DNA of 64,000 nucleotides from Macrostomum lignano (GCA_002269645.1 NIVC01001615.1:124001-188000), one strand, 5' to 3'. Shown: positions 12,707 through 51,200, counted from the stretch's first letter. The notes: generated by a model not told the origin, from the letters alone. Translations and numbers: made by a program.

Positions 12707-15986
<3,280 letters not shown>

Positions 15987-31077: not shown

Positions 31078-32006
31078 TTAAGTCATCATTTGTCTAACTA
31101 TGCACTAATACTTTTTTGTACTTTTTTTAAATAACTTAAAAAATGATTAAGTCTATACATTTGTAAAGGCATTGTCTTAATTCTTATTTTTTACATTAAA
31201 TCATTTTTGTTTTTCTTTAACCACTGTCTAAATATTTATTTGATTTAATTGACCCTGTTATGTATATAAGCATGATAAAAAGCATCTGGCCATGAATTAA
31301 GCATATATAAAAGCAAAGTTCCATAGCTAGGGCCTAGCTTCAAACCAGTAAGTAACCTTTTGGCTTTTCAACTTCCTAATCCTATTCAAGCAAGTTGCTC
31401 TGGTACCTATTTTATCCAGAGTTGTATTTTAGCAATTTCTTTTGTTGACTACTAGGTAGGCCTAACCTATTATCATATTATAAAACACTGTTTGAAGACT
31501 TATCATTTTAGGCCTACAAAGTAATAATGAATGATTTGTTCTTTTTCATGCATGCTGCATTGACTGAAATACTGCTGTTACCAGCTTCTAATTGATAGAT
31601 TTGCATAAAACACATCTGGACTGACTATCATACTATTAAGTCAAAGGTTTCCTACACAAAACAAGGTTTTGCATATACCTTTTGCATCTTTTTAAAAACT
31701 TTGCAAGTTATCAATTTTCTATTGATTTACTTCATTTTGCAATGAATATAATAATTTTATAAAGATATATTCTATTTATTAATAGCACAATGCTTGCGTA
31801 CAACAGACCCACTGAAAATAACTCAAAGTACGAACTGCATAGACACTGCTCCTGGAGACATATCGATTGCTATATTGCTGTCGCCTTTGCATCAAACTTT
31901 TTGGTTTTTAAATTGACAAATCAAGTACCAGCAAGCAGTCCACCCTGTGGAACTTTGTAATTACCTGTATCTTGCTGCATAAAGAAAGAAGGCGTCAATT
32001 TCAACA

Positions 32007-32741
32007 ATGTCAGGCAGACCAATTTCTGAATATTTGTCTGAGCGCAGTTACTCGGCTGTCTGTCAGGTCTTGCACATTTTTCTGACTGCCCGCCATCCTG
32101 GAATGCTGCTGCAGCAAGATCGCGTGACTGAGTTTGCTAGGCATGGCCTGAATGGGCCCGAGCATATTCAGTGCGCTAAGCTGGGCTTCTTTCCGCTTCC
32201 TTCACCTCATGGTGGTGCAATCGACGACAGCACCGTGATGGTTGTCTGCTTCAGCTGCGGCTTCGAGTGCAAGCTGTCCAGCGTCCAGCATCGAATCCTT
32301 GGCAGCTTCAACAGGCTGCACTGCCCGCTGCAGGCTGCCCGTTGTCCCAAGCAGCAACCAATGCAACAGGAGCTTTTGGGTGACGGGCCTTCGGATTTCC
32401 CGAGCCCTACGCAGCTTGCACAGCTTCTGACTTTCATTCAGAGCAATTGTGGCACAGTACTGACCGAGATGTTTCCGCCGGATGCAGTTCTGTTGTGTGC
32501 CGCCACCATGCTCGTGACTGAGCGCCGATCTCTGTTAAATCTGCAGCCCGGGTATCTGGTTGAGCGCCTGCAAGCTAGCAATTGGAACCGGCAATCGCTG
32601 TGGCAATTCCCCGTGCTTGACGAGGCGTCAACTTTTACTGGCGACTTCATCAACCTGGTCAGCGCTGGTCCCGGAGCTGTCGACCTGAGAGATGTTCAGG
32701 GTATCGGCTATTTAGTTAGCCAGGCTGTGATGGCTGAATGA
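32007..32741 (+). CDS. Intronless BIR-like (IAP-repeat-related) protein A, 244 aa
   Basis: DRVTEF...AKLGFF...VVCFSCG...CP matches the BIR R..(S/T)F...LA..GFF...V.CF.C pattern; paralogous to 36534-43207. Confidence 0.75.
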   Translation: MSGRPISEYLSERSYSAVCQVLHIFLTARHPGMLLQQDRVTEFARHGLNGPEHIQCAKLGFFPLPSPHGGAIDDSTVMVVCFSCGFECKLSSVQHRILGSFNRLHCPLQAARCPKQQPMQQELLGDGPSDFPSPTQLAQLLTFIQSNCGTVLTEMFPPDAVLLCAATMLVTERRSLLNLQPGYLVERLQASNWNRQSLWQFPVLDEASTFTGDFINLVSAGPGAVDLRDVQGIGYLVSQAVMAE

Positions 32742-32981
32742 ATGCTTTTTGAACTAACTAACTAAATTATCAAAAAACCTGTTTTAATTAACTCGAATAA
32801 ACTTTACCCAAAAGACTGCTATGATTATATATACTAGAAAAATTAGCTGGATGTCACTCGTAATTTAATTTGTGAAAAAGTAGAGCGTATACTTCTTTTT
32901 TAGTAGTTTGCCAGAGCAGCGTCACTTAAATCGATCGGGGTTTGCGACCTCGGGAGCTTATGTGATGAAGAATTAACGACT

Positions 32982-33989
32982 CAGGGGTCGGCAAACTTTT
33001 CAGTGCGGGCCGGATCGGAAGACTGGCTGAAGGGGGGCGGGCCAGAAAAAATGCACAACAAATTGAGACTCAATGACCATTTGGTATCCTATAGAATCGT
33101 TCGTTAAATTATTTTCTCGCTTGAGTTTGATTCCTTTCTATTTTTAGAGTCCAAATATATGAAAAAAAGTGAACGAATTAACAGGTTAACATGTACTGAC
33201 AGCTAAATTGTTTGTTATAGTCAACCGCCACATCACGACACGAGGGTACTACGTAATAGTTAAACAGTGGCACAATCCAACCTGAGGCCGCTGGTCGTCC
33301 AGCCATCCAGGGAGTAGTAGTCCAAAATCAGAAAATTAAGCAATGGCTTGAATTGAATCCCAGTATTGGCAGCTCGGCAGCTAATTTTTCAATCTCAAAC
33401 GCATCTTCCTTTAATTAAGGTCCCCCCGCGCACTGTCACAGTTTTTTACCATAGACATATTTTCATGCTTTGCGTGCACAAAACTGATACTTTAGAACTG
33501 ATTTTTTAGAATTCCTGAAATCAGCGCACAAACTCAAATGTGGAGAGATGTGTGGATAAAATTACCCAGTCACACTATTACCCAACATTAAAGTAGTACC
33601 CTCGTGTCGTGATGTGACAGGAAACGAAGGAAACGAATTCAAGCGAAAAAATAATTCAAGGAACGATTCTATAGGATAGCCGACAATTTTAGATGATAGA
33701 CCAAATAGACCAATAGACCAATTGATAGACCAATTTTAGATCTAGACAGACAGCACATCAGTTCAAACTTTCGAATATGGTATGGGGGGTAAAGGCCCAG
33801 GGGGGTAGATTTTGGAGGGTAAAGACCCAGAGGGCGGATTCTGGAGGGTAAAGACCCTGGGGGCAGATTCTGGATGGTAAAGAAAGACCCAGGGGGGGGG
33901 GCGAAGTAATCGGGGGACGACCTGTGGCCCGTGGTCTTGAACTGAAAACCTGATCGGGCCCTCAAGTGGAAAAAGGTTGCCGACCCCTG
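32982..33989. mobile_element. hAT (Charlie-like) MITE with TIR CAGGGGTCGGCAA; contains a nested 388-bp element (33229-33616) with 24-bp perfect TIR CACATCACGACACGAGGGTACTAC
   Basis: Both TIR pairs seen directly; no matching TSD found for either. Confidence 0.7.
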
Positions 33990-34334
33990 GCCTAACTGTT
34001 ATCAGTCTGGCGGGGGGCTGCGACACCATCCCTTTTATCACTTGCAATCTTTGTATAGCCTTATCTACTCAAGTCCTTTTTATTGCGTATTGATAATTTT
34101 TCCTACATTATTTTACTCGTATCTATTTATTCAAGCTTTGCCTCTGTTATTGGAATATTTGTTATTTAATGCTTGTGGATTGGGTTCTTAATTGTTTAAT
34201 GCTCGTTTTGAATTATTTTTCACCCTATGTAGTGTATTCTTTTTCGATAACTATTTATTGTTTATTATATTCAAAAACCATCAAGTTCACGTACCGAACG
34301 TTACGAAATAATCCAAAACTGTGGGAGGGGGCGA

Positions 34335-34408
34335 AGGAGCTTAGCGGTAAGCGGATCTGACTCTCGCGTCACGACACCTGGTTCGATTCCGTCCGCAGCT
34401 ACATTAGT
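34335..34408 (+). other. tRNA-derived SINE head or pseudo-tRNA
   Basis: D-arm-like GCTT-AGCGGT-AAGC and B-box GGTTCGATTCC; the anticodon and acceptor stems do not pair properly. Confidence 0.45.
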
Positions 34409-35242
34409 TTAGGGCTTGTGTGTTCACGAAAGTTGGCTGTTGGCGTTAGACTTACCTATGAAAAAAACCTATGTAAAAATTAACGTAATTGTGGGTAAAC
34501 GGCAGGAGTAACTTTAACTGTATTCTAAAGGCTAAGGCCTCGTCATCTAGTTAGTACTACGTCTTTTTTTGGGTGGGCATTTTTACAACTTACCTTGGCT
34601 GGGCCCCTCACCTAAAAGTGAGATTCTGAGTCGCGATATGTCAGAACTGGTGTAGTGGTGTCTGAGTGGTGGCTTAGCAAGCACTTCACCTGTAGACACC
34701 TGCGTTTGAAGTTCTGTCCAAGTCTCAGTGAGCAACCTTATGCACACACTGTAACAGAATTACTTTAAATCCTTTCCTTGCTACTATTCAGTAGGCAATT
34801 TTCTATGTGGGTGATGATTCGAGAATTGAATTTGGCCATGCACCAAACCTTCCTTGATAATTGAATTTTATTTTCAAATAATAAAAGTTGGGACTGGAGA
34901 CGCAGACTTGCAAGTTAGAAATTCGCCTAATCGAGTATGGTATCGTGACAATTGACAGCTGCGAACTCCGTTACCCTTAAATTTAGCTGAAACGTGTTTT
35001 GTTATTTTTCTTTAATCAAATTTTCTGTTTTCTTTATTTTTTACGCGTCAATAAGCTATATTTATTTCACTTCTACTCACTTAATAAAAATATTTACCTT
35101 GTTTACGTATGGCGGGTATAAAAAACTGCCTTAATATCTTTGCTTTTATCAATAGTAATTCATTAGTGTTTTTAATAGGCAATATTTGTAGCCTCATCCC
35201 AGATCCCCTATATGCCCATGCAGTCATTCCCAGACCTCATAG

Positions 35243-36150
35243 AGCCATGAAGTTCCTGTCTAAGACTCCACAGAGCCATGAAGTTCCTGTCCTAGACTCC
35301 AGAGCCATGCAGTTGCAGTTCCTGTCTGAGACTCCACAGAGCCATGAAGTTCCTGTCTGAGACTCCACAGAGCCATGCAGTTCCTGTCCTAGACTCCAGA
35401 GCCATGCAGTTCCTGTCCTAGACTCCAGAGCCATGCAGTTCCTGTCCTAGACTCCACAGAGCCATGCAGTTCCTGTCCTAGACTCCAGAGCCATGAAGTT
35501 CCTGTCCTAGACTCCAGAGCCATGCAGTTCCTGTCCTAGACTCCAGAGCCATGCAGTTCCTTTCCTAGACTCCACAGAGCCATGCAGTTCCTGTCTGAGA
35601 CTCCACAGAGCCACGAAGTTCCTGTCTGAGACTCCACAGAGCCATGAAGTTCCTGTCTGAGACTCCACAGAGCCACGAAGTTCCTGTCTGAGACTCCACA
35701 GAGCCATGAAGTTCCTGTCTGAGACTCCACAGAGCCACGAAGTTCCTGTCTGAGACTCCACAGAGCCATGAAGTTCCTGTCTGAGACTCCACAGAGCCAC
35801 GAAGTTCCTGTCTGAGACTCCACAGAGCCATGAAGTTCCTGTCTGAGACTCCACAGAGCCACGAAGTTCCTGTCTGAGACTCCACAGAGCCACGAAGTTC
35901 CTGTCTGAGACTCCACAGAGCCACGAAGTTCCTGTCTGAGACTCCACAGAGCCACGAAGTTCCTGTCTGAGACTCCACAGAGCCACGAAGTTCCTGTCTG
36001 AGACTCCACAGAGCCACGAAGTTCCTGTCTGAGACTCCACAGAGCCACGAAGTTCCTGTCTGAGACTCCACAGAGCCACGAAGTTCCTGTCTGAGACTCC
36101 ACAGAGCCACGAAGTTCCTGTCTGAGACTCCACAGAGCCACGAAGTTCCT
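35243..36150. repeat. Minisatellite, 31-bp unit (GAGACTCCACAGAGCCAYGAAGTTCCTGTCT)
   Basis: ~29 copies; just upstream of BIR-like gene B. Confidence 0.96.
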
Positions 36151-36533
36151 GTTTTTAACTCCAGAACCATTCACATGCATTCGGAACATATTTTGAATTT
36201 TCGTCAAACGTGACTACTTCATTTATTTTCACGGTTTTTATTCATGCTTATGAATTTTATCATTATTCCACTCGAAGGTCGGAAGCATCTCTGAATCGGC
36301 CGTGTCTATTAAATTAATGGGAGTTCTTACAAACAGTATCAGTGTAAAACCCGTGGTCTTTCATCGAATATCAGTGTTCATTGAGCTTCACAGATACTGC
36401 AGCTCTCGTCATATTGACACGTACTTGCTGGACTGCACTCTGCTTAATCTGCTGTCACAGCTGTTTAAAGGCAGCGCTGTGTGTGGCGACTAAACTTCAT
36501 AGAGCCAGCTGACTTACAAAAATTACTGCCAAT

Positions 36534-39500
36534 ATGAATGTTGAACTGCCTGAAACTAAGAAAATTTCTCGCTATCTGTCAAGCTCTGTGAATTTGAACT
36601 CCATTACTTCAATTCTTCTGCTATGGCTCAATGCTGTTTACCAAACTTCGTTCCTGGAAAAGGACCGTTTGGCAAGCTTTCTGGTGTATTTTCCTGCTCT
36701 GAACCAGGAGTTTGAAAACCTCGCCGCACTTGGCTTCTTTGCCATTTCTCAGCATGAAATTGTTTGCTTCGCCTGTGGCCTGCGCTGCCAGATAAGAAGG
36801 TGAGCAGGCTTGATAGGGCTGCATCTGAAAGGCCAGTCAAGGGGGTAGCCAGCCACTGACGGGACAGTGAGGCGGGGGGGGTTAACCAGCCACTGGCGGG
36901 ACAGTGAGGCGGAGGGGGGGTACCCAGCCAGGGTCAGAGAAGGGGGTAGCCAGCCACTGAAGGGTCAGAGAAGGGGGTAGCCAGCCAGGGTCAGAGAAGG
37001 GGGTAGCCAGCTACTGAAGGGTCAGAGAAGGAGGTTAGCCAGTCACTGAGGGGTCGGAGAAGGGGGTAGCCAGCCACTGAGGGGTCAGAGAAGGGGGTAG
37101 CCAGCCACTGAGGGGTCAGAGAAGGGGGTAGCCAGCCACTGAGGGGTCAGAGAAGGGGGTAGCCAGCCACTGAGGGGTCAGAGAAGGGGGTAGCCAGCCA
37201 CTGAGGGGTCAGAGGGGTGTAGCCAGCCACTGAGGGGTCAGAGAAGGGGGTAGCCAGCCACTGAGGGGTCAGAGAAGGGGGTAGCCAGCCACCGAGGGGT
37301 CAGTAAAAAGGGGTAGCCAGCTACTGACGGATTAGAGACAATATATAGTTTTATAGTGTTTGAATCTGGTCTATGAAAGTTTTTTAAAACAGATAGCCCA
37401 GTGCTGCTCTCCAACAGACAAATCATGACCGTAACGTTCAATGTCTGCACAATTGCTATATAATTCAAAACGCTTTCATTTGCAGACAGCTGCAGCCCCG
37501 ACCCGGCATCTTGAACAATCCCACCTGTCCGCTTCAAGCTGCTCGGCTGTACTGCGGCGGTGGCAGCGGCGACCGTGAGCTGGGCTTGCCGATACCTGAG
37601 CTGCGCTGCCTGAGGCCCACGATCTGGCTTCGATTTGTTGATCTTAAAGCTATCAGCGATGTGAGCAATAGGCCTTAACCTCTTCAAGACTGGGCCCAAA
37701 ATTTTTCATCTCCGTTCCAGTCGGATGGTAAGCAGTGCTTACCATAGACTATTTGGCTTCTGACTGAGCCATAGATATTTTTTCTCTCCGTTCCGGTCGG
37801 CATGGTAAGCAATGCTTATCAATAGACATTCAGTCGGCTGGGGTAGAAAAATAAGCAAAAATGTACATTTAAGTAGCCTGTTTCTAGACTGAAAGCACAC
37901 TGGTCCCTGTACAAGAGGAATGGGCAACACGAACAGTATAAGAAACGTTCTTTTCCTAGCCCCAGTCAGTTCAAACAGAGAAGCTGATCCATCTCCTTAC
38001 TCGTCTAGCTTTTTGACAGCTTATTCAGTCGTGCTTTATACTACAGTGGTTCTTTGACTCCTTAAGTTTTCGTTTCCTATACTTTATCTGTCTCAGTATG
38101 GTTTGAGCCGAATACTATAAAATCAGTTCTCAAAGAGCTTTGAAATGGCCCAAGTGGACGAAATGTCTGAACTCATGACATCGGACGACGAGGACTACCT
38201 CTTATCAGATGATTCTTCTGGTGAGTCAGATGTTCTGGACAGTGTTGATGAGGACGTACAGGTTGCTGATGAGTTGTCGTGGCGGCCTGCTATCGTTGGG
38301 AACGACGCATCGACGAGAGATATCGAGTTTTTCGGAACACCTGGCCTGAATCCTGGAATAATAGTGCCTGCCGATGTTGAGAACTCAACTTCCTTCTTCT
38401 TAGGTTTATTCCTGTCTGATTCGTTGTTTGAAGATCTAGCTATGTGGACTAACCGTAGAGCTTGGGCAGCAATTCATTCATTGGATGCTGATGACCTGCC
38501 TGTGAGTTTGTTACAGTGGAACGAATGTAGCGCAAACGAAGTCAAGAAGTTGATTGGCATGTACCTGTACATGGGAAGCAACAAGAAGACTGAGATGAAT
38601 GACTACTGGAGTACTGGCAGCTACCACTCGACACCATACTTTCAAGCACCTGAGGCGCTCTCTAGAGACCGCTTCAAGCAATTGCTCGGCTTTCTTCGCT
38701 TTTATGATTGCCTTGAGGATCCCACACCTGGTGATCCGTTGTACAAGATTCGTCCATTTTTGAACAATTTGCGTGACACCTGCGTGAACATCTACAGACC
38801 TGACGAAGAAATAAGTGTTGACGAATCGTTGGTTCTTTACAAAGGACGATTAGGCTTCAAGCAATACATTCCAACTAAGCGCGCCAGGTATGGCATCAAG
38901 GTGTACTGTGCTTGTGAGTCTGAAACAGGCTACTTGTTCAACTTTCGAGTTCATGCTACTCCGGAGGAGAATCGTAGATTTGCTTTAGATCCACAAAGCG
39001 GAAACCTGTCATTCAGCGAAAAAATTGTTGTCGAGCTTTGCCAAGATCTGTTGGACCAAGGCTACCGCATTTTTGCCGACAAGTGGTTTGGTTCTTATCG
39101 GTTGGCTATGTACCTCCTGGATCGAGATACTCATCTGACTTGCACCATACGAGCTGACCGAGGCGTGCCGATTGAGCTCAGGCAGTTAAATGTGCCGCCC
39201 AATGATGTCGGCTTCATGCGCAAGGGTGCCGTACTGGCCGCAAAGATTGTTGAAAGAAAGGAAAGCGGTCTAAAAACGTTGTATTTGCTGGACACAAAGG
39301 AGGCAGCATCAAAAGTTCCAGTCCGACGAATCGCCCGAGGTGGAGCAGCGGCTGCAGTGCAGAAGTGCCGCTCAGCTTTGAGTTACAACCGCTGCATGGG
39401 CGGCGTCGATCGAATGGACGGCCACATGCAGCCCTACCAGCCTGCTCGGAAAACCAGAAAATGGTTTTTGAAACTTGGTTTGCACCTGTGCTTGCAGATG

Positions 39501-42500
39501 GTCCGAAATGCTTGGATTGTATACTGTAAGTGCGGCGGCCGAAAGGTGTTCGTTAAGTTTCTGGAAGCCAGCATTCGTGAATTCGTGCAGAGCACTGGGA
39601 TGAGCAGAAGGCGAGCAGCCGCTGCAGCTCAAGCCTTCGGCCAAGTCAGCCCGCATTTCCCAATGCGAATTGCGGCCCGAGAAAGTCAGCCAAGGCCAAA
39701 TAAGCGGTGTCGCGTCTGCTACTGAGCTGAAAGAATCAAACGATCAATTTACTGCTGCCCTGCGTGTCCAGGTGAACCAGGACTGTCTGGAGACCTGCTT
39801 TCAGCAATGGCATTCTTGAATTCTTGACAGTTTTTGTTCCCAGTGCACGCATGCTGGAAGAATATTTCCTGCTATATTCCCTTCTATACGTGTGCCTGAA
39901 AGAAAATTGAGGAAATGGGTTTCTCCCAGTTAGCTTCTTCTTTCTGAGACTATAATTAAAAATTAATTCAGAATACTAGTGGCGCTAACATCTCGAGTTG
40001 CTGAGAATGCGCCATAAGAATTGTTTGAATGAATGCCAAAAACGAATCGTTTGTATACTTCGTGATAAAACATCTTTAAAGATCTAAGAAACAAGTGATA
40101 GTAATTAAATAACATTTACTTTTTCTGTTATCAATTCTGTCCTGCTCCAAATACGGGTTTATGCGGGGCAAAGAGGGCAACTGCCCCCCAAACAACTTAC
40201 ATCTGTGGCGCCCCCAGCTGCGCAGCTCGCCTTTGTTGTGTCTTTTCCCTTTGCTGCCGCCTCCTAGGTACAAAAATTCTGCACTACTTAATAATTTCCT
40301 GGGTCAAAAAATCTGCATCCGCCTCTGTTCTGCTGACATTTTTCATGTCCCAGTTTTCATGTTTGCATCATACGCTGGTACGAGTAGATTGTTTCTCTTC
40401 AGAAAATTTTAATTAACTTACGCGTACGGTGTTACTCAATTTATTCTTACTCAATTGTTTTCTCACTCAGCAAAAATATACATCAAATTTATATAAACGA
40501 AAACTGATCTTACTGTATACAGTTGTATTTCAAGGAAGCTGAAATTTTTGTACCGTCTGTTGGTTATTTTGATTGAGAAAGAGATCTAAACTACGAGTAA
40601 AAAAATCAGGGAAGCTATCGTTCTAAAAGTTCTGCTTACCATAGCCGACCGGAACGGAGTGTGAATTTTACCATAGATTATATTTGATCTGAATCATCTG
40701 ACTTCTGCCTAGACTGAAACTAGGGTGTGCGCATGGTAAGCAGTGCTTACCATCAGACTTTTGGAGGTTAAATGTCCTAATTAATTTTACTATTTCTACT
40801 TGTAACTACAGTCACATCCTGTTAATCCAGATCTCTCCCAGTCACATCCTGTTAATCCAGATCTCTCCCAGTCACATTCTGCTAATTCAGATCTCTCCCA
40901 GTCACATTCTGTTAATCCAGATCTCTCCCAGTCACATTCTGCTAATCCAGATCTCTCCCAGTCACATCCTGCTAATCCAGATCTCTCCCAGTCACATCCT
41001 GCTAATCCAGATCTCTCCCAGTCACATCCTGTTAATCCAGATCTCTCCCAGTCACATCCTGCTAATCCAGATCTCTCCCAGTCACATCCTGTTAATCCAG
41101 ATCTCTCCCAGTCACATCCTGCTAATCCAGATCTCTCCCAGTCACATCCTGTTAATCCAGATCTCTCCCAGTCACGTCCTGCTAATTCAGATCTCTCCCA
41201 GTCACATTCTGTTAATCCAGATCTCTCCCAGTCACATTCTGCTAATCCAGATCTCTCCCAGTCACATCCTGCTAATCCAGATCTCTCCCAGTCACATCCT
41301 GCTAATCCAGATCTCTCCCAGTCACATCCTGTTAATCCAGATCTCTCCCAGTCACATCCTGCTAATCCAGATCTCTCCCAGTCACATCCTGTTAATCCAG
41401 ATCTCTCCCAGTCACATCCTGCTAATCCAGATCTCTCCCAGTCACATCCTGTTAATCCAGATCTCTCCCAGTCACATCCTGCTAATTCAGATCTCTCCCA
41501 GTCACATCCTGCTAATCCAGATCTCTCCCAGTCACATCCTGTTAATCCAGATCTCTCCCAGTCACATTCTGCTAATTCAGATCTCTCCCAGTCACATTCT
41601 GTTAATCCAGATCTCTCCCAGTCACATTCTGCTAATCCAGATCTCTCCCAGTCACATCCTGCTAATCCAGATCTCTCCCAGTCACATCCTGTTAATCCAG
41701 ATCTCTCCCAGTCACATCCTGCTAATTCAGATCTCTCCCAGTCACATCCTGTTAATCCAGATCTCTCCCAGTCACATCCTGCTAATCCAGATCTCTCCCA
41801 GTCACATCCTGCTAATCCAGATCTCTCCCAGTCACATCCTGTTAATCCAGATCTCTCCCAGTCACATTCTGCTAATCCAGATCTCTCCCAGTCACATTCT
41901 GTTAATCCAGATCTCTCCCAGTCACATCCTGCTAATCCAGATCTCTCCCAGTCACATCCTGTTAATCCAGATCTCTCCCAGTCACATCCTGCTAATCCAG
42001 ATCTCTCCCAGTCACATCCTGTTAATCCAGATCTCTCCCAGTCACATCCTGTTAATCCAGATCTCTCCCAGTCACATCCTGCTAATTCAGATCTCTCCCA
42101 GTCACATCCTGCTAATCCAGATCTCTCCCAGTCACATTCTGTTAATCCAGATCTCTCCCAGTCACATTCTGCTAATTCAGATCTCTCCCAGTCACATTCT
42201 GTTAATCCAGATCTCTCCCAGTCACATTCTGCTAATCCAGATCTCTCCCAGTCACATCCTGCTAATCCAGATCTCTCCCAGTCACATCCTGTTAATCCAG
42301 ATCTCTCCCAGTCACATCCTGCTAATTCAGATCTCTCCCAGTCACATCCTGCTAATTCAGATCTCTCCCAGTCACATCCTGCTAATCCAGATCTCTCCCA
42401 GTCACATCCTGTTAATCCAGATCTCTCCCAGTCACATCCTGCTAATTCAGATCTCTCCCAGTCACATCCTGTTAATCCAGATCTCTCCCAGTCACATCCT

Positions 42501-43207
42501 GCTAATCCAGATCTCTCCCAGTCACATCCTGTTAATCCAGATCTCTCCCAGTCACATCCTGCTAATCCAGATCTCTCCCAGTCACATCCTGCTAATCCAG
42601 ATCTCTCCCAGTCACATCCTGTTAATCCAGATCTCTCCCAGTCACATCCTGCTAATCCAGATCTCTCCCAGTCACATTCTGCTAATCCAGATCTCTCCCA
42701 GTCACATCCTGCTAATCCAGATCTCTCCCAGTCACATCCTGCTAATCCAGATCTCTCCCCAGTCACATCCTGCTAATCCAGATCTCTCCCAGTCACATCC
42801 TGCTAATCTCTGTCAGCTTTTCTTCATCAACGCAGGCCTTGCGCGCAGCTCCCAGCCGCACCGCCAGCTCGTTTTACTCCAAAGACGCGGTGCTGTTCCT
42901 GCTGACGGAGCTGACGGTGCAGGACGGCGCGGACGTGCGCAATGTGCCGGTGTCTGCCTTGGTGAGGCGCCTCTTCTCGGCCCGTGACGGCTCCTACCCG
43001 TTCTCAAACGACGCCGCTAACGAGGGCAAATTTGCCGGCGCTTTCCAGCAGCTGGTGGCGGCCGCTGGCAATGGCGAAGGATTCTCGCCTCCCGGCCAGG
43101 AGCCGGTTGACGAGATCGGCAATCTGCTGCCGCCGCCGCCGCCGCAGCAGCAGCATGAGAACTTCGGCCCGTTGGTGACCTCGTCGCCCGTGTATTCGCT
43201 GATCTGA
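36534..43207 (+). CDS. BIR-like protein B, ~270 aa, 3 exons: 36534-36799, 37486-37660, 42836-43207
   Basis: DRLASF...LAALGFF...IVCFACG in exon 1. Splice AG|GTGAGC..TTTGCAG|A yields CPLQAAR, identical to paralog A. GAT|GTGAGC..AACGCAG|GCC joins exon 3, whose DAVL...LV.RL...F.G.F..LV.A aligns with A. The total of 813 nt is in frame. Confidence 0.75.
36835..37325. repeat. Minisatellite, 31-bp unit (GCCAGCCACTGAGGGGTCAGAGAAGGGGGTA) in BIR-like B intron 1
   Basis: ~15 copies. Confidence 0.93.
37679..40767 (+). mobile_element. piggyBac DNA transposon, ~3.1 kb, TTAA TSDs
   Basis: TTAA at 37675-37678 and 40768-40771; imperfect ends CCTCTTCAAGACT / (rc) CCTCCAAAAGTCT; shared subterminal palindrome ATGGTAAGCAGTGCTTACCAT at 37725-37745 and 40733-40753. 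Confidence 0.9.
38145..39820 (+). pseudogene. piggyBac (PGBD4-like) transposase; DDD core open to 39725, cysteine-rich domain broken
   Basis: SVDESLVLYKGR, FADKWFGS and MGGVDRMD catalytic motifs. After KRCRVCY there is a TGA (39723-25), then SIYCCPACPGEPGL and a frameshifted LETCFQQWH. Confidence 0.88.
40808..42807. repeat. Minisatellite, 30-bp unit (CAGTCACATCCTGYTAATCCAGATCTCTCC), ~66 copies, in BIR-like B intron 2
   Basis: Exact 30-bp period visible line to line. Confidence 0.98.
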
Positions 43208-43715
43208 ATAGACGAACAAGCTGACAGAGAAACTGAATTTTATAACAACTTTGAAAGAAGACTTTAATAGTTTGTGAATGCTTCTATATATATTTGCGTG
43301 CTAGTATGCCCAAACTGCTAATGAATTCGTCCAGGGAAAGCATCATTGATCATGCAGTTTGAGTCTTCTGTATGTTGTCAGAAAACATACGAATTCTGTA
43401 CTCTGAGTAGTTTCATAAGGCGTAGCGCCTCCTGCTCCGAATCTCTCAACTTGTCTGTCAACTTGCTGTTCGAGCGAGTCCGTTAACGCCCGCCCAGGTC
43501 TCAGAATTGTACCACTGGACGGTTTGTCAACAGCGCCGCCCTCTGGCGGTCAAGTAGGGCCTCGGACTGTAGCAATCCAAGCAAGCCCGTTGTGACAGCA
43601 AAGATCTTGTCACCAGACACCAAAGGGAACCAGACCGCTGTTGGTAGACAAACTGCTGACATCGCTTAAGTTGCAGTCTAACACGGTTGTCTAGACCGCA
43701 GATACCAGATATTAA

Positions 43716-44387
43716 CAGTAGAACTACCAAGAGGGGGGGGGATTTTTTTTCTGCGCCGGAACGCAGCAACGCAGGCACACGAAATTCAAGAACGCGGACC
43801 AACTTTCTGTTGCGCACTTTCTCAAACAGGAATCCAGTCGCCGGCCCTCCAGACCGTCGAGATGTTCGACGATTCTGCCAGAGGGTCGGATTTTTCCCGT
43901 GAGCGCTAGTGTGTTCAGTACACCCCGTGAGCCAGTCAGCACTGCGCCTCGGAGTGGCCTTGCCAGGCCTCCATATTTCATCAGCACGTCGACCACATGT
44001 GTCTGCATCAGCTCTGACTTCGATGGTCACTGGCCTTCATCCAAGCGGAGCTTCTGGACCTTCAACAGGTGGCACCAGGTGACTATGGACACCCGGATGC
44101 AAATTTCTCTAGTTTCGCTGATCAAGCCTCGACAGTGGGCGAGCCTCAACTGATAAAATTTGGAGCCTTGGCGGGGCTGCTCTGAGGCGCGGTGCTGATT
44201 GGCTCACAGGGGTGTACTGAACACACTAGCGCTTGCGGGAGGAATCCGACCTTCTGGCAGAATCGTCGAGTGTCTCGCCGGTCTGGAGGGCTGGCGACTG
44301 GATTCTTGTTTGAGAGGGTGCGGAAAAAAAGTTAGCCGTCCTTCTTGGTAGTTCGACGGGCAGAAAAATGGCTTGTTATTCCTACTG
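43716..44387. mobile_element. TTAA-flanked MITE with long diverged inverted arms (ends CAGTAG...CTACTG)
   Basis: TTAA at 43712-43715 and 44388-44391; ~43800-43973 is a diverged reverse complement of ~44160-44335. Confidence 0.8.
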
Positions 44388-45287
44388 TTAAGTACTACGC
44401 GTCCTTATAGGTCTAATCTGTGCTGTGGCAAATTCTTTGCAAGTTTTGGCAAAATGGAACGCCTTGTTACATGATTATTATTCATATTTATTCATATTTA
44501 TTTATGATTATAAAAGTTTAAGCCTAGTGCCCTAACCCAAAAAACTGCTTTAATGACACAGTCCCTACTAAAGTATGAAACTAATTATTGAATTCAAATT
44601 ATCGAACTTTTCAGAGAAGAAACTAGACTAAATCGATCTTTATGATGTCTTGCTAAATGATAAATTTAATTTAATTAATTTAATTTAATTTAAATACTCG
44701 TAGTTTGCTAATTGTTAAGAATATTGTATTTTTCTGTTTTTTTAAAAGCTTTTTACTCAAATTTTACTCAAGTCTGGGCCGCTAGCAGATTTGGCCAGAC
44801 ACTCAGCCTTCGTATTGGCTGCCCTAACCTTGCCACCTTGCTGCTTTGGCCTGGTCTGCTTATAGCGCTCAAATAAACATTTATTCAAGCAGATTCCGAG
44901 TCTACAGGCATTGATTTTCTAAGGATCGTTTATTTAACCAATCGTTTATGTAGCTAGATGCACTACTGTTAGTAAGCTAATCCTCGTCACGACCCCCGAG
45001 TCGATTCCGTGTGCGGCTTGTACGCAGGAGAATAAGTGTTGTGCGATTCTCACAGCCATGAGGGCCGACCTCCAAGGCACAGAGAGTGTACATGCCTGGC
45101 GATTGGAAAGTCGGGGCCGCTGTGCACTCTCTGTGTGAGCGTGTGTACGAGTGCCTGCCTGCGTACAGTATTGGCGCGCTTGTATGTACTCAGCAGTCAG
45201 CGGAATGGGCAGAATTGCCGTCAGCGCTGGCTGTGAGATGATGTCGCCGAAGGCCTCCTGCTATTACTATTGTTTTTTTGATTCCAG

Positions 45288-46250
45288 GCCAATTCCACAG
45301 CAGCTACAGCCGTGCTGGTCTCCACGCGTCGCCTTGGCGACAGCTCCGACACCATCTTCCAGGTGGCGCATCCGGAGTGCCGTCTGCACCTTCTCGATGC
45401 CGATGCCGAATCGTCGTCAGCCAAGGAGGCCGCCGCCGAGCCGGCGCTGGTGTACCTGTGCCAGGTGGGCAGCCCGCCGCGCTACTGGCTGAGCCGCTGC
45501 ACCGCCGATCAGCTTGCGGCCGAGTTCGCCCGGCTGAATCCCCGCCTGGAGGCCCCGCTCGGCCGCGTGCGGGCCGCCATCCTGGCCGGCCTGGCCAGCC
45601 CCGCCGCCGACCTCCGCCTGCTGTCGCCGTCGCTGCTGCAGCTCAGCGGCCGGCTGTCCGAGCACGCGGCCGGCACGGAGTTCCGCTGGCAGTTCCGACT
45701 TCGACCGGCGGGGCCCGACGCTGTCGACGCTCTGCTGGTGCGGCCGCTGGCAGCTGCTGCCGCCGCCGCCGAGGCCGAAGCTGCGGACCTTCGCGATCGG
45801 CTGGGCCGTCTGGGCCGGGCGGCCGCCCAGCTCGCCAGCGACAATGGGCTGCGGTGCCCGCGCCACCTGGCGGACCTCGTTGCCGATGCGGACAAGCTGG
45901 CCGCTGCCGCCGGTGCTGGAGGTCAGGGCGGCGGCGTTGGCAGCATCGCCGCGGTGGCGGAGGCCGCTGGCGAGCGCTGGCAGGAGCGGCTGGCCCGCGC
46001 CGTGGCTGCTGCCGAGTTGGCGGCCGCGGCAGCTGCTGACGGCGCCGCCAGCGCAGCCACGTCGCCGGCTAAAGAGTCTGGAGATGCCGCGCCTGCCGCC
46101 GCCAAGCCGACCAGAGACGAGCGGCTGCTGCTCCGAGTCGAGGACCCCGCCGAGCGGCAGCGCCGAGAGGAGGCCAAACGGAAGCTGGAGGCCGAGCGAG
46201 AGGCTGGAACAAAAAATGTCGTGAAGAAAAAGAAGAAAGGCCTGTTCTGA
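45288..46250 (+). CDS. NHEJ1: XLF/Cernunnos (NHEJ1) homologue, main exon; a 5' exon may be 45058-45132
   Basis: ARLNPRLEAP ~ human KELNKRLTAP; FRWQFRLRPAGPDAVDALLVRPL ~ [23 protein letters not shown]; then a coiled coil and C-terminal KKKKKGLF ~ the XLF Ku-binding motif KKPRGLFS. Acceptor TTGATTCCAG at 45287. Confidence 0.75.
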   Translation, partial: ANSTAATAVLVSTRRLGDSSDTIFQVAHPECRLHLLDADAESSSAKEAAAEPALVYLCQVGSPPRYWLSRCTADQLAAEFARLNPRLEAPLGRVRAAILAGLASPAADLRLLSPSLLQLSGRLSEHAAGTEFRWQFRLRPAGPDAVDALLVRPLAAAAAAAEAEAADLRDRLGRLGRAAAQLASDNGLRCPRHLADLVADADKLAAAAGAGGQGGGVGSIAAVAEAAGERWQERLARAVAAAELAAAAAADGAASAATSPAKESGDAAPAAAKPTRDERLLLRVEDPAERQRREEAKRKLEAEREAGTKNVVKKKKKGLF

Positions 46251-46812
46251 ATGATCTGGCTGGTTGTGACTGCATTCCCGCATTTCTGATTGACTATACA
46301 CTGTATGCGCATCGGTTCTGTGTGTGTACAGCTGTGTAGCGTTTTTCTATTAGTTATAATAGAGTAAATATACAGGCAAAATGCATAGCGAACTTACATT
46401 TATATACGCATATTAAATTTCAGAGACTTCTCAGTGTACTTTTATTTGATTTGCGCGCTGGAATTTTTTCAAAAGATGGAATGATGGCTCTTACTGTAAC
46501 CAGTATCTTCCCTGACTGAGGCCTCAAGTTTGTTGGGACCTCTTGCGCAGTGCCTTAGTCAGAATTGGTTTGGTTAGAGATTCAGTGATGGGGCCACTTC
46601 AAACTCAAGCAGTGTTTTTTGTTTTGCTATTGTCCGGACTGGCTATCTTCTTCCAGGCTCGAGCGCAAGCACTGGCCTATCTTTGAAATGTGCATGTACT
46701 TTTACTTTGTTATTTAATAGGTCGCCAGTGCCTGCATGGGGACAAAGTCAAGAATTCTACATGTATATGTATATGACAATTCCTATACATGTACATTATC
46801 GGTATTTCAGCG

Positions 46813-47575
46813 CTCATTTTAGCGCCGCAGGCAGTCATTTCGGTGCCGCAGGAAGGCAGTCATTCGGTGCCGCAGGAAGGCAGTCATTTCGGTGCCGCAG
46901 GAAGGCAGTCATTTCGGTGCCGCAGGAAGGCAGTCATTTCGGTGCCGCAGGAAGGCAGTCATTTCGGTGCCGCAGGAAGGCAGTCATTTGGTGCCGCAGG
47001 AAGGCAGTCATTTGGTGCCGCAGGAAGGCAGTCATTTGGTGCCGCAGGAAGGCAGTCATTTGGTGCCGCAGGAAGGCAGTCATTTGGTGCCGCAGGAAGG
47101 CAGTCATTTGGTGCCGCAGGAAGGCAGTCATTTGGTGCCGCAGGAAGGCAGTCATTTCGGTGCCGCAGGAAGGCAGTCATTTGGTGCCGCAGGAAGGCAG
47201 TCATTTCGGTGCCGCAGGAAGGCAGTCATTTGGTGCCGCAGGAAGGCAGTCATTTGGTGCCGCAGGAAGGCAGTCATTTCGGTGCCGCAGGAAGGCAGTC
47301 ATTTGGTGCCGCAGGAAGGCAGTCATTATGGTGCCGCAGGAAGGCAGTCATTATGGTGCCGCAGGAAGGCAGTCATTTCGGTGCCGCAGGAAGCAGTCAT
47401 TAGGAAGGCAGTCATTTGGTGCCGCAGGAAGGCAGTCATTTGGTGCCGCAGGAAGGCAGTCATTTTGCCGCAGGAAGGCAGTCATTTCGGTGCCGCAGGA
47501 AGGCAGTCATTTGTCCGCAGGAAGGCAGTCATTAGGAAGGCAGTCATTCGGTGCCGCAGGAAGGCAGTCATTTTG
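46813..47575. repeat. Minisatellite, 24-25-bp unit (GGTGCCGCAGGAAGGCAGTCATTT)
   Basis: ~30 copies. Confidence 0.96.
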
Positions 47576-48235
47576 AATCGGGTCACAAGGTGGGGTGGGG
47601 GCAAAGCATTGGCATGCGGGGGACATGCCCCCCCTGTCCTCCCTGATTTCACAGTCAAGTCGCCAAAAATTCGCCCAGCAATCACTTTGAAATTGGAGTC
47701 ACATTTCTGACGTTTCTGACCTCTGAGACGCTCTGGACAGTTTTTACGGGTAAACAATGGATTATTCCCGTCCAATAGTTTGAGAAAAAAGTTACAAAGT
47801 GAAGTGGAATACGATTCGAACCACATCTGTAATGGTGCGCACGCTCGTTACTCTACATGCTGCGACAGGTGTATTTTCGCGTTTATATTGAAATTTTACG
47901 AAGAAAACCTGGCACGTACTATACAGCACAGGCTTGCAAACGTCGAACTTGAAAATTACGATAGCAACAAACAATTCAAATTTGAAAAACACACCGTACA
48001 ACGGCTAACCAAGTACCAGAGAGGAAACCAATTAGCCAAGCTTATAGGAAACGTATAACGCATTTATCAACAAATACAAACTAACTGACTACTTAAAGTA
48101 CTAATAAAGCAAACAATTTTCATACTACAATAACTACTGAAATTTTCGACTTTACCATAAAAAATTTCTAATGATTATGACTATGGTGCCTCTGATGTAA
48201 AGCTGTCAGTCTTATAGCATCTGTCTGTCTGCCTG

Positions 48236-51200
48236 TCAGTCTATCAGCGCCTCGGCCAGCACCCAGACCTCCTCCTTGGGCTTAGTCAGCAGGCCGAAGC
48301 TGGACACAGCCGTGTAGGTCTCGTCAACCAGCCGGAAGCGGAAGGCGGCCAGCAGGCGCGACAGCCACAGGGCCGTCTCGGCGTAGGCCAGCCGGTAGCC
48401 CGGGCACTTGCGGCGGCCAAAGCCGAAGGGTTCAAACAGCTGCTGGCCGGTCCACCTGTCCGGGTTGAAGTCGTCCGGCTCAGGGTAGGCCTCTGAGCAC
48501 ATGCCGGCCGCGCCGAGCGCTTGGATCACCGGGGTGCCGGCTGGCAGCTGCGAAGGGGGCAGGCGAGAGTGCTCGGAGATGAGGGATCAGGGTTACTCTG
48601 TCATTCCTGCTAGATTGCTGCTTTAGGAACTTTAGGTTAGATAGACTCACATTTCAGGTCTATGAATCGAGAAAATTATTTCTTTTCGGGTTTACTACGA
48701 GCTTTTTCCAACTATTTCTATTCTCAACTTTGCCAGAGATTTTTCCTCCTGGGATTTCCCTGCAAAATAGATTCCCTCCTGCTGGGATTTCCCTGCAAAA
48801 TAGATTCCCTCCTGGGATTTCCCTGCAAAATAGATTCCTTCCTGGGATTTCCCTGCAAAATAGATTCTCTCCTGGGATTTCCCTGCAAAATAGATTCTCT
48901 CCTGGGATTTCCCTGCAAAATAGATTCTCTCCTGGGATTTTCCTGCATAATAGATTCTCTTTCCCGGGATTTCCCTGCAAAATAGATTCTCCCTCCTGGG
49001 ATTTCCCTGCGAAATAGATTCTCCCCCTGGGATTTCCCTGCGAAATAGATTCTCCCTCCTGGGATTTGCCAGCAAAATAGATTCTCCCGGCTGGGATTTC
49101 CCTGCCAAATAGATTTTCCCTCCTTGGATTTCCCTGCAAAATAGATTCTCCCGCCTGGGATTTGCCAGCGAAAAAGATTCCCTCCTGGGTTTTCCCTGCA
49201 AAATAGATTCTCTCCTGGGATTCCTCTGCGAAAGAGATTCTCCCTCTTGGGAATTCCCAGCTAAAAATACTTCTGGAATTTCCCTGCCTAATAGATTCTC
49301 CCTCCTGGGATTCCCCTGCAAGAGATTCTCCCTCTTGGGAATTCACAGCTAAAAATACTCCTTCTGGGATTTCCCTGAATAGATTTTCCCTCCTTGGATT
49401 TCCCTGCAAAATAGATTCTCCCGCCTGGGATTTGCCAGCGAAAAAGATTCTCCCCCTGGGTTTTCCCTGCAAAATAGATTCTCTCCTGGGATTCCTCTGC
49501 GAAAGAGATTCTCCCTCTTGGGAATTCCCAGCTAAAATACTTCTGGAATTTCCCTGCCTAATAGATTCTCCCTTCTGGGATATCCCTGCGAAATAGATTC
49601 TCCCTTCTGGGATTTCCCAGCGAAATAGATTCTTCCTCCTGGGATTTCCCTGCAAAATAGATTTTCCCTTCTTGGATTTCCCTGCAAAATAGATTCTCTC
49701 CTGGGATTCCTCTGCAAAAGAGATTCTCCCTCCTGGGATTCCCCTGCAAGAGATTCTTCCTCTTGGGAATTCCCAGCTAAAAATACTCCTTCTGGGATTT
49801 CCCTGCAAAAAATTCTCTTTTCTGGGAATCTGGGATTTCCCTGCGAAATGGATTTTTCCTGACGGGATTTCCCTGCAAAAGAGATTCTCGCTCTTGGGGT
49901 TTCCCTGTAAAAAATACTCGTGGGGTTTTCCTGCTTACGGTGTGGCCGCCGACCTCGACCTCGGTGTCGGACACCCGGGCAGCGAACGGGGCCAGACAGG
50001 ACAGCCGCATAGTTTCGTCAAGGAAGGCCCGATGGAAGGTCATCTGCCCGATGGCTGCCATGTTGGCCTCTCCGGCGGCGCCGAGGACCTCAGCGGACTC
50101 GGCCCGGAGCCGGTCGGCCAGGTTCGGGTGTTGGATAGCATAGTAGAGGGCCCAGAGCAGCAGGTAGCCGGAGGTGTGGAACCCGCCAACCATGTAGGTG
50201 ATCACATCGGATCGGAGAGCCTCCGCGTCCTTGGCGTGCAGCTCGATGGCCAGATCGGCGAAGGTCTTGTCAACGTCCGAGTCGAACTTCATGGCCGAGC
50301 GTCGGCGTACGGTTGAGTCCACGAATTCGTGCAGGTGCGAAAGGGCGTCGTTGAATGCCTGGATAGCATCGGGTAGGGCGTTGTGAGTTCAATTACAATG
50401 GCTAAATGTAACACCTGCTTTTAGTCTTAAGCTCAGGATTTGGATCTCTCTATCTGGGTTCTTCATAGCTGGATTCGGGATCTTCATGTTTGGAATTGGG
50501 ATCTTCATGTTTGGATTCGAGATCTTCATATTTGGAATCGGGATCTTCATGTTTGGAATTGGGATCTTCATGTTTGGAATTGGGATCTTCATATTTGGAA
50601 TTGGGATCTTCATGTTTGGAATTGGGATCTTCATGTTTGGAATTGGGATCTTCATGTTTGGATTCGAGATCTTCATATTTGGAATTGGGATCTTCATATT
50701 TGGAATCGGGATCTTCATGTTTGGAATTGGGATCTTCATATTTGGAATCGGGATCTTCATATTTGGAATCGGGATCTTCATGTTTGGAATTGGGATCTTC
50801 ATATTTGGAATCGGGATCTTCATGTTTGGAATTGGGATCTTCATATTTGGAATCGGGATCTTCATATTTGGAATCGGGATCTTCATGTTTGGAATTGGGA
50901 TCTTCATATTTGGAATCGAATCCTATTTGAGTTGGGTATTCGGGATCAGAATCCCAACAGTCGCGCACCTGGACGCGATGATCGCCAGCCTCGGGCTCTC
51001 CCTGAGTCAGACGCGCCTCCATCTCGTTCCAAGCGAGATCGTAGCAGGATTTTAATTGAGCCACCTGAGTATGGGATTTGGGATGAAGAATAAGCAATTA
51101 GGAAATTAGAAAGCGTTTTATTACAGAAACATATTTGCTGTACAAGCAGCAAAAACAGCCACCTGCTCATCGGGCAGGCTGGCGCTGTCGGGCTCGACTG

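What the first reader, a model, noticed from the sequence alone, without database searches (positions are those of the whole stretch)
32007..43207. Paralogous BIR-like proteins with a His-less C-x2-C-x3-C-x17-C zinc-site variant
Seen: after the BIR-type R..(S/T)F...(L)A.LGFF...V.CF.C core, both proteins have an extra Cys at +4 and a Cys at +22 after the CxxC (A: CFSC-GFEC...HCPLQAAR; B: CFAC-GLRC...TCPLQAAR). G at +15, N at +18 and CPLQAAR are also conserved, with no indel across the intron in B. Established: canonical BIRs bind Zn via CxxC-x16-H-x6-C. Neither paralog has the His at that position, and the loop that forms the caspase/IBM-binding groove is replaced. Inference: a lineage-specific IAP-derived family with a possible C4 zinc site and a non-canonical function. 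This is the best candidate for an undescribed system here.
Basis: partly seen in the sequence, partly recalled or inferred. Interest (0 to 1): 0.8.

Follow-up and report, generated by a model that had tools for sequence, protein, structure and literature searches.

The report
Degenerate His-less BIR-like gene pair
Two neighbouring, transcript-annotated genes of the flatworm Macrostomum lignano encode proteins that keep the first half of an apoptosis-inhibitor (BIR) zinc module, but the second half has no zinc-binding histidine and has extra conserved cysteines instead; it is a modest evolutionary curiosity whose fold and metal site remain unproven.

Summary
Gene A (32007-32741) and three-exon gene B (36534-36799, 37486-37660, 42836-43207) are tandem paralogues (~30% identity). 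Both share R..(S/T)F, LGFF, VCFxCG, then Cys +4, Gly +15, Asn +18 and CPLQAAR at +22, with no indel. B has no His after the CxxC. My B model is identical to GenBank PAA65812.1, which comes from a transcript-derived annotation, so the splice model holds.

BIR ancestry is supported only for the N-terminal half. Pfam is below threshold (18.9 vs 22.9 bits; A gives nothing). hhalign gives P 5e-6, above all 150 shuffles. All 13 weak PDB sequence hits are IAP BIR domains. Foldseek on a low-confidence model hits mostly BIR or BIR-like chains, but only at E 0.5 or worse. Both AlphaFold runs were poor (pLDDT 42-45), so the fold is unconfirmed.

The proposed C4 site is untested. A fifth invariant Cys (+29 in A, +31 in B) gives a rival ligand set. 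No homologue outside M. lignano appeared among 1.84 billion representatives.

New findings: a conserved upstream ORF precedes both genes, and an intact piggyBac element sits in B's intron 2.

Verdict: a probable new variant of a known domain, of moderate interest.

The parts
32007..32741 (+). Gene A, single exon, 244 aa. It is 92% identical to GenBank PAA88106.1 (BOX15_Mlig015637g1), which lies at the homeologous locus.
32118..32345 (+). BIR-like module of A (aa 38-113): DRVTEF, AKLGFF, a 10-aa insertion, then VCFSCG. Conserved Cys codons: C81 at 32247-32249, C84 at 32256-32258, C88 at 32268-32270, C106 at 32322-32324, C113 at 32343-32345.
   Evidence: hhalign of the A pair alone against BIR gives P 1e-4
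36534..36799 (+). Gene B exon 1 (aa 1-89, split codon). It holds DRLASF, LAALGFF and VCFACGLRC, with C78 at 36765-36767, C81 at 36774-36776 and C85 at 36786-36788. The donor at 36800 is GTGAGC.
37486..37660 (+). Gene B exon 2. It holds G96, N99, C103-PLQAAR (TGT at 37526-37528) and C112 (37553-37555). The acceptor is ttgcag and the donor at 37661 is GTGAGC.
42836..43207 (+). Gene B exon 3. It encodes the helical C-terminal domain, which is colinear with A's C-terminus (DAVL, LV.RL, F.G.F..L..A). The stop codon is at 43205-43207.
31790..31960 (+). Conserved upstream ORF of A (56 codons). Its stop lies 46 nt before A's ATG.
36317..36493 (+). Conserved upstream ORF of B (58 codons from the first ATG). 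Its stop lies 40 nt before B's ATG, and it has the same frame offset to the main ORF as in A.
37679..40767 (+). piggyBac-type transposon inserted in intron 2 of B. It is not part of the protein family and is absent from the homeologous locus.

Best explanation
A and B are old tandem duplicates in Macrostomum lignano. Both are annotated from transcripts. Each encodes an intracellular protein of about 250 aa with three regions: an N-terminal helix, a BIR-derived module, and a lineage-specific helical C-terminal domain.

The module keeps the first half of the BIR architecture: helix with R-x2-[ST]-F, helix with LA-x-LGFF, beta1, beta2, and the V-C-F-x-C-G zinc knuckle. The second half has been rebuilt. 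Two residues after the knuckle appear to be missing. The Trp that walls the IBM groove is gone. If C106/C103 is taken as the last canonical Cys (reading i), the position of the canonical His is an invariant Gly.

Inference: the module still holds one structural Zn2+ using cysteines only. Two come from the knuckle and two from the three further invariant Cys (+4, +22, +29/31). It would then act as a protein-protein interaction module without an IBM/caspase groove, like a type I BIR. With no RING, UBC or CARD domain, the proteins would be adaptors rather than ligases. A conserved upstream ORF suggests translational control of both genes.

Shown here: the paralogy, the gene models, the N-terminal BIR similarity, the loss of His and Trp, the Cys conservation, purifying selection on B, and restriction to M. 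lignano in the databases searched.

Inferred: the fold of the second half, zinc binding and the ligand set, and the function.
For: Gene models match the transcript-derived GenBank proteins exactly.

Paralogy: E 1.5e-6 and E 8e-11.

BIR similarity of the first half:
- Pfam BIR scores E 0.002 over profile positions 1-45 of 70.
- A BIR HMM scan of all 1093 window ORFs finds only B exon 1 (E 1.4e-4; next best E 0.9).
- hhalign gives 86% probability and P 5e-6, with none of 150 column shuffles reaching the score, and the reversed alignment scoring 11.4.
- phmmer against PDB returns 13 hits, all IAP BIR domains.
- An AlphaFold2 model built from B, A and A' alone has the helix-helix-strand-strand-strand-helix order.
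- That model's Foldseek hits in PDB and BFVD are dominated by cIAP1, XIAP, ILP2, DIAP1, survivin, NAIP, Pml39 and viral IAPs.

Constraint:
- Five invariant Cys and the invariant CPLQAAR motif, with synonymous codon differences.
- B has dN/dS 0.27 between homeologs (10 nonsynonymous of 21 changes, P 0.007).
- In B, P-T-C-P-L fits the canonical P-x-C-x-[FL] context of the last BIR Cys.
Against: Pfam's gathering threshold is not reached, and A alone has no BIR hit.

No alignment extends past the CxxC. MAFFT places the second half differently depending on how the sequences are trimmed.

Both AlphaFold2 models are low confidence, with mean pLDDT 44.6 and 42.3.

All Foldseek matches have E of 0.1 or worse. 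Foldseek also uses sequence, so these matches are not independent of the sequence similarity. The full-length model matched nothing.

A's N-terminal domain has dN/dS 0.97 between homeologs, and A overall cannot be told apart from neutral evolution (P 0.19).

Only four sequences from one species exist, so Cys conservation rests on a single deep comparison (Fisher P 0.045).

There are no metal, expression-pattern or interaction data.
Confidence: 0.5

Rival explanations
1. Decaying relic. The module is a BIR that has lost its metal site and is drifting. The genes persist for their C-terminal domain, or are on the way to becoming pseudogenes. The extra cysteines would then be incidental.
For: The His and Trp are lost. 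A's N-terminal domain has dN/dS 0.97, and A overall is not distinguishable from neutral. In B, constraint between homeologs is strongest in the C-terminal domain, with 0 nonsynonymous and 4 synonymous changes. AlphaFold2 finds no confident fold.
Against: After divergence to about 30% identity, the 32 residues from CxxC to CPLQAAR have no indel. They keep 5 Cys, G, N and a 7-residue identical motif encoded by different codons. This is the best conserved part of the protein, not the worst. All four copies have intact ORFs and splice sites.
Confidence: 0.2
2. Not BIR-derived. This would be an orphan Cys-rich zinc-knuckle (treble-clef) protein whose R..F / LGFF / CFxCG resemblance to BIR is convergent or due to chance.
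For: The Pfam score is below threshold, and all database E-values against single BIRs are 0.03 or worse. Only about 43-46 columns align. There is no structural confirmation.
Against: The profile-profile score lies far outside the shuffle distribution (34.4 vs a maximum of 25.1, n=150). Every weak hit in PDB sequence searches is an IAP BIR domain, and nearly all of the better-ranked PDB Foldseek hits are BIR or BIR-like. In BFVD only about a dozen of the top 50 are named IAPs, although they make up most of the named hits near the top. Three separate motifs occur in the right order and spacing.
Confidence: 0.15
3. Iron-sulfur rather than zinc. C-x2-C-x3-C ... C-P with a fifth Cys could bind an Fe-S cluster, which would make this a redox or sensor module built on a BIR scaffold.
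For: This rests only on the pattern. There are three closely spaced Cys plus a distal Cys-Pro, all-Cys ligation, and one spare Cys. From general knowledge, ferredoxin-type motifs end in C-P.
Against: There is no similarity to any Fe-S family in Pfam at E up to 10. The spacing is neither CxxCxxCxxxCP nor Cx3Cx2C. The parent fold binds zinc.
Confidence: 0.05

Closest known systems
BIR domain of IAPs (Pfam PF00653; closest weak hits are cIAP1 BIR3 and ILP2/ML-IAP-type BIRs)
   Same: The R-x2-[ST]-F helix, the LA-x-(A/L)GF(F/Y) helix leading into beta1, V-x-C-F-x-C-G, the same order of secondary structure elements, and in B a P-x-C-x-L context for the last Cys.
   Different: There is no Trp at +7 and no His at +17; if C106/C103 is aligned with the last canonical Cys, an invariant Gly takes the His position. 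Two residues after the knuckle appear to be deleted. Extra invariant Cys sit at +4 and +29/31, and there is an invariant CPLQAAR motif. A carries a 10-residue insertion before beta2. The score is below Pfam's threshold. There is no RING, UBC, CARD or second BIR.
BIR-like domains (BLD1/BLD2) of ZC3HC1/NIPA, Pml39 and Rsm1 (zf-C3HC PF07967, Rsm1 PF08600)
   Same: These are divergent BIR-related zinc modules with G-[WYF]...C-x2-C. Pml39 is the top, though non-significant, Foldseek hit.
   Different: Those proteins are bimodular and keep a CCHC site with H-x3-C-x-[WYF] (PMC10162418). Here there is one module and no conserved His. Pfam gives no hit to PF07967 or PF08600 at E up to 10.
Type I BIRs (XIAP BIR1, cIAP BIR1), from established knowledge of IAPs
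   Same: They lack a functional IBM groove and are used for other protein-protein contacts. This is the working analogy for function.
   Different: Type I BIRs keep the full CCHC zinc site and the Trp. This is a functional analogy only and was not tested here.

Membership tests
BIR (PF00653) | Score at or above Pfam's gathering threshold (22.9 bits) | tested here: not met
   The B domain scores 18.9 bits (E 0.0023) over profile positions 1-45 of 70. A and A' give no hit at E up to 10.
BIR (PF00653) | N-terminal motifs R-x2-[ST]-F and LA-x-AGF[YF], followed by V-x-C-F-x-C | tested here: met
   A has DRVTEF, AKLGFF and VVCFSC. B has DRLASF, LAALGFF and IVCFAC. hhalign gives P 5e-6, above all 150 shuffles.
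BIR (PF00653) | C-x2-C-x6-W-x9-H-x6-C zinc signature (as given in PMC13159474) | tested here: not met
   There is no Trp or conserved His after the CxxC. B has no His at all between residues 81 and 254. The last Cys lies at +22, not +24.
BIR (PF00653) | BIR three-dimensional fold | tested here: inconclusive
   AlphaFold2 gave mean pLDDT 44.6 (A, full length) and 42.3 (B domain). The order of secondary structure elements fits BIR. Foldseek top hits are BIRs, but at E 0.5-8 in PDB and E 0.1 or worse in BFVD. The full-length model matched nothing.
BIR (PF00653) | Binds one Zn2+ | not testable with these tools
   This needs metal analysis of purified protein.
IAP family | At least one bona fide BIR, usually with a RING, UBC or CARD domain | tested here: not met
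   The BIR is sub-threshold. There are no RING, UBC or CARD hits in Pfam. The UniRef name 'E3 ubiquitin-protein ligase' belongs to a chimeric 1218-aa model that fuses A', B' and the next gene.
ZC3HC1/Pml39 NuBaID (BIR-like domains) | Two modules, each G-[WYF]-x(n)-C-x2,3-C-x(n)-H-x3-C-x-[WYF...] | tested here: not met
   There is a single module with no H-x3-C. Pfam gives no zf-C3HC or Rsm1 hit.
piggyBac transposon (side finding) | DDE_Tnp_1_7 transposase, TTAA target duplication, terminal inverted repeats | tested here: met
   PF13843 E 2e-66. TTAA is present at 37675-37678 and 40768-40771, with a single TTAA at the empty homeologous site. The ends are imperfect (10 of 14), with sub-terminal inverted repeats.

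The most novel reading that the evidence does not exclude
The module would be the first Cys-only (C4) derivative of the BIR zinc fold. It would be a functional, lineage-specific remnant of the BIR3-type IAP lineage; a 2026 survey reports that platyhelminths have lost RING-containing and XIAP/DIAP2-like IAPs (PMC13159474). Both paralogues would also be translationally gated by a conserved-peptide upstream ORF.
Probability: 0.2. Interest if true: 0.55.

Novelty: new variant of a known kind. Interest (0 to 1): 0.4.

Why it matters
BIR domains are defined by an invariant CCHC zinc site. In the literature I could search, the divergent BIR-like domains of ZC3HC1/Pml39 also keep CCHC. A folded, zinc-binding, His-less derivative would show that the second half of the fold can be rebuilt around different ligands. 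It would also add a member that HMM-based IAP censuses miss. The 2026 survey of 312 species does not mention Macrostomum, and any HMM-based census would fail to detect these proteins.

The practical impact is limited. There is one species and four sequences, with no phenotype, no structure and no link to apoptosis.

The conserved upstream ORF is an independent, testable lead on translational control in a flatworm that can be made transgenic.

Tried and rejected
1. Homologue searches.
- A found only its 92% homeolog, and B found nothing.
- An exhaustive profile search of 1.84 billion representatives returned only that same homeologous A' plus three translated tandem repeats, which I judge spurious.
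- The last word-indexed search, with the domain alignment, returned nothing and did not even recover the family's own members. I treat it as uninformative.

2. A profile search of PDB sequences with the full-length alignment found nothing at E up to 10.

3. AlphaFold2 on full-length A and on the B domain gave low confidence both times. Foldseek on the full-length model gave noise.

I did not pursue it further, because such an alignment would impose the BIR fold and make the result circular.

6. Aligning the second half of the module to canonical BIRs gives different answers depending on trimming. No ligand assignment can therefore be read from alignment.

7. ZC3HC1-type membership is rejected, because the signature is not met.

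8. The upstream ORF is not an N-terminal extension by frameshift. The main frame is closed by a stop at 31980-31982, which lies after the uORF stop. Fusion by splicing is not excluded, but the transcript-derived CDS starts at the annotated ATG.

9. Gene conversion is rejected as the cause of CPLQAAR identity, because there are 5 synonymous codon differences.

10. Literature searches for Macrostomum plus BIR, and for the gene identifier, found nothing.

It was not verified residue by residue. Pfam's own HMM gave a concordant result.
Full report
**Origin and gene models**

The window is Macrostomum lignano. ORF A is 92% identical to GenBank PAA88106.1 (BOX15_Mlig015637g1). The window itself is contig NIVC01001615.1 of assembly GCA_002269645.1.

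A is a single-exon ORF at 32007-32741 (244 aa).

B is assembled from three exons: 36534-36799, 37486-37660 and 42836-43207. Both introns have GTGAGC donors and GCAG acceptors. The frame is kept, giving 813 nt and 270 aa.

This 270-aa sequence is exactly GenBank PAA65812.1 (BOX15_Mlig022905g2). The record for the contig lists a 270-residue gene starting at window position 36534. The GenBank annotation of this assembly was made from assembled transcripts that were cut at trans-splice and poly(A) sites (PMC5730564).

**A second, homeologous locus**

Locus L001 (contig NIVC01000201.1) carries A' and B' in the same order. It is colinear with window 31532-48616. B' has the same three exons and encodes 274 aa, identical to PAA88105.1.

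A', B' and the next gene downstream are named Mlig015637 g1, g3 and g4. Under the naming scheme of that annotation, this suggests they were cut from one transcriptional unit. This is an inference.

**The observation**

Both proteins share:
- D-R-x-[TA]-[ES]-F
- [AL]-x-LGFF
- V-C-F-x-C-G
- Cys at +4, Gly at +15 and Asn at +18 after the CxxC
- C-P-L-Q-A-A-R starting at +22

There is no indel across these 32 residues, although B's intron 1 interrupts them.

B has no His from residue 81 to residue 254. A's His residues at +11 and +21 are not shared with B.

Evidence that the paralogy is real:
- A against B exon 1: E 1.5e-6.
- Full-length B against A': E 8e-11 over residues 9-224.
- CPLQAAR is encoded with 5 synonymous differences between A and B, so its identity reflects selection on the protein and not gene conversion.
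- Cys columns are conserved more than other columns (5 of 7 against 25 of 80; P 0.045).

**Is it BIR?**

For the first half of the module, probably yes.

- Pfam's BIR model matches B at E 0.002 (18.9 bits). This is below the 22.9-bit threshold and covers only profile positions 1-45 of 70. A gives no hit.
Only B exon 1 was picked out (E 1.4e-4; next best E 0.9).
- Profile-profile comparison of the four family sequences against the BIR alignment gives 86% probability, P 5e-6 and a score of 34.4. In 150 column shuffles the mean was 11.2, the SD 2.7 and the maximum 25.1. The reversed alignment scored 11.4. The A pair alone still gives P 1e-4.
- phmmer of the B domain against all PDB sequences returns 13 weak hits (E 0.03-3.6). 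Every one is an IAP BIR domain.

All of these alignments end at the CxxC-G.

The second half cannot be aligned reliably. Depending on how sequences are trimmed, MAFFT puts CPLQAAR opposite the canonical 'DPW..H' helix or elsewhere.

By eye, B's P-T-C-P-L fits the canonical P-x-C-x-[FL] context of the last Cys. That alignment implies a two-residue deletion after the knuckle. It also places the invariant Gly where the His should be. The phmmer alignment to cIAP1 BIR3 likewise pairs 'CFAC--GLRC' with 'CFCCdgGLRC'. This puts the +4 Cys opposite a cIAP1 Cys on strand beta3 that is not a zinc ligand (from my own knowledge of IAP structures).

**Structure**

AlphaFold2 on full-length A, with a three-sequence alignment, gave mean pLDDT 44.6. 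The B domain gave 42.3.

The predicted order of elements in the B domain is helix, helix, three strands, then a helix on PLQAAR. This is the BIR order, but confidence is too low to call the fold.

Foldseek with the full-length model gave noise.

Foldseek with the B-domain model behaved differently. That model was built without any BIR in its alignment and without templates. Nearly all of its better hits were BIR or BIR-like chains:
- In PDB: Pml39, cIAP1 BIR3, ILP2, XIAP BIR1/2/3, BIRC6, DIAP1, survivin and NAIP.
- In BFVD: many viral IAPs.

These hits had E of 0.1 or worse and TM-scores of 0.26-0.46. Because Foldseek also scores sequence, this is corroboration rather than independent proof.

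**Zinc site**

B cannot have a CCHC site. If metal is bound, the ligands are Cys only. Two ligand sets fit the conservation.

- Set (ii) is the knuckle plus C+22 and C+29/31. This mimics the canonical arrangement of a knuckle plus two downstream ligands spaced 6 residues apart. However, the spacing is 6 in A and 8 in B, and the intervening PLQAAR is predicted to be helical.

I cannot decide between them with these tools. An Fe-S cluster is a remote third possibility.

**Selection**

Between homeologs:
- B has dN/dS 0.27 (10 nonsynonymous of 21 changes, P 0.007). Its C-terminal domain has 0 nonsynonymous and 4 synonymous changes.
- A has dN/dS 0.67 overall and 0.97 in the N-terminal domain. Neither differs significantly from neutral.

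Long-term constraint on the module is nonetheless evident from the A-B comparison.

**Distribution**

No relative outside M. lignano was found:
- The word-indexed search of 5.8 billion proteins found none.
- The exhaustive HMMER search of 1.84 billion representatives returned only translated tandem repeats besides A'.
- The final search was uninformative.

These collections appear to hold no other Macrostomum proteomes. 'Lineage-specific' therefore means only that the family is absent from other sequenced flatworms and animals at detectable similarity.

**Comparison with known families**

The closest known kind is the BIR domain. Membership fails on the Pfam threshold and on the W/H part of the signature given in PMC13159474.

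The ZC3HC1/Pml39 BIR-like domains are the only other divergent BIR relatives in the searchable literature. They are bimodular and keep H-x3-C, so these proteins are not members of that family either.

The 2026 IAP survey reports that platyhelminths lack RING-containing and XIAP/DIAP2-like IAPs, and it does not mention Macrostomum. The weak best matches of B are to BIR3-type domains. A relic of that lost lineage is therefore conceivable, but this is speculation.

The UniRef name 'E3 ubiquitin-protein ligase' on A0A1I8J0U2 belongs to a chimeric 1218-aa gene prediction that fuses A', B' and the next gene. It carries no RING.

**New finding: a conserved upstream ORF**

Upstream of both genes lies a small ORF:
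- A: 31790-31960, with its stop 46 nt before the ATG.
- B: 36317-36493, with its stop 40 nt before the ATG.
- Both have the same frame offset to the main ORF.

The cores are YELHRHCSWRHIDCYI in A and IELHRYCSSRHIDTYL in B. They share 11 of 16 residues, yet differ at 9 synonymous positions, including TCC/AGC for Ser and AGA/CGT for Arg. The other two frames are not conserved.

tblastn of the A peptide against the window finds only the B copy (E 4e-5).

Between A and A', the ORF has 11.5 synonymous and 8.5 nonsynonymous differences. The test on the rounded counts (8 nonsynonymous of 20) gives P 0.0002 against neutrality.

This is coding-type conservation. I read it as a conserved-peptide uORF or a small upstream cistron. 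It is not in the GenBank annotation.

**Verdict**

Descent of the first half from BIR is probable. The His-less state is certain. The C4 zinc site and any function remain hypotheses.

I rate it a new variant of a known kind, of moderate interest.

Noticed in passing
window 31790-31960 and 36317-36493 (also L001 9784-9954 and about 14512-14688): A conserved upstream ORF lies 40-46 nt before the start codon of both paralogues. The cores share 11 of 16 residues with 9 synonymous differences. Between A and A' the pN/pS ratio is about 0.2 (P 0.0002). It is not annotated. It may be a conserved-peptide uORF or a small cistron.
   Followed up: partly
window 37679-40767: A 3089-bp piggyBac-type element sits in intron 2 of B. 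It has an intact 526-aa transposase ORF (38145-39725, PF13843 E 2e-66), TTAA on both sides and imperfect terminal repeats. The homeologous locus has the empty site AGGCC-TTAA-ATGT. It looks recent and possibly active.
   Followed up: yes
window 40809-42808, 35241-36152, 36931-37338: Three satellite arrays: a 30-nt unit x 66.6 copies in intron 2 of B (about 2.0 kb here, about 0.62 kb at the homeologous locus); a 31-nt unit x 29.6 copies between A and B; and a 31-nt unit x 13.3 copies in intron 1 of B. Their long ORFs on the minus strand are artefacts of the repeats.
   Followed up: partly
window 45312-46250 (P0009); L001 18249-19208 (P0008): The next gene downstream encodes a 318/319-aa Ala-rich protein annotated as 5'-partial (Mlig015637g4), with no Pfam hit. 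It shares the transcriptional-unit name with A' and B'. It is fused to them in the old chimeric UniProt model A0A1I8J0U2, which is named 'E3 ubiquitin-protein ligase'.
   Followed up: partly
window 31790-32741 vs L001 9784-10735: Between homeologs, synonymous divergence is about five times higher in the upstream ORF (pS 0.33) than in the main ORF of A (dS 0.066). Flanking non-coding DNA is about 87% identical. This could mean homogenisation of, or constraint on, the main CDS. The counts are small.
   Followed up: no
window 4001-6000: A block with extreme strand composition (GC 0.61, GC skew -0.90, AT skew -0.82). It carries long ORFs on both strands (4010-5782 +, 4077-5693 -) and is presumably a C/T-rich simple repeat.
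   Followed up: no
window 12395-13804; 61635-62501; 23280-23855; 46683-47576: Other ORFs with Pfam hits: a C2 domain (E 2.7e-13); a gag-type CCHC zinc knuckle (E 5.8e-9) and an integrase H2C2 fragment (E 2e-4), which suggest retroelement remains; and an odd repeated TtuA_LIM_N-like match (E 4.8e-12 with no single stretch passing), probably a Cys-rich repeat.
   Followed up: no
tool behaviour: The word-indexed homologue search with the four-sequence domain alignment found only 32 candidates. It did not recover the family's own database members, so that negative result carries no weight.
   Followed up: no
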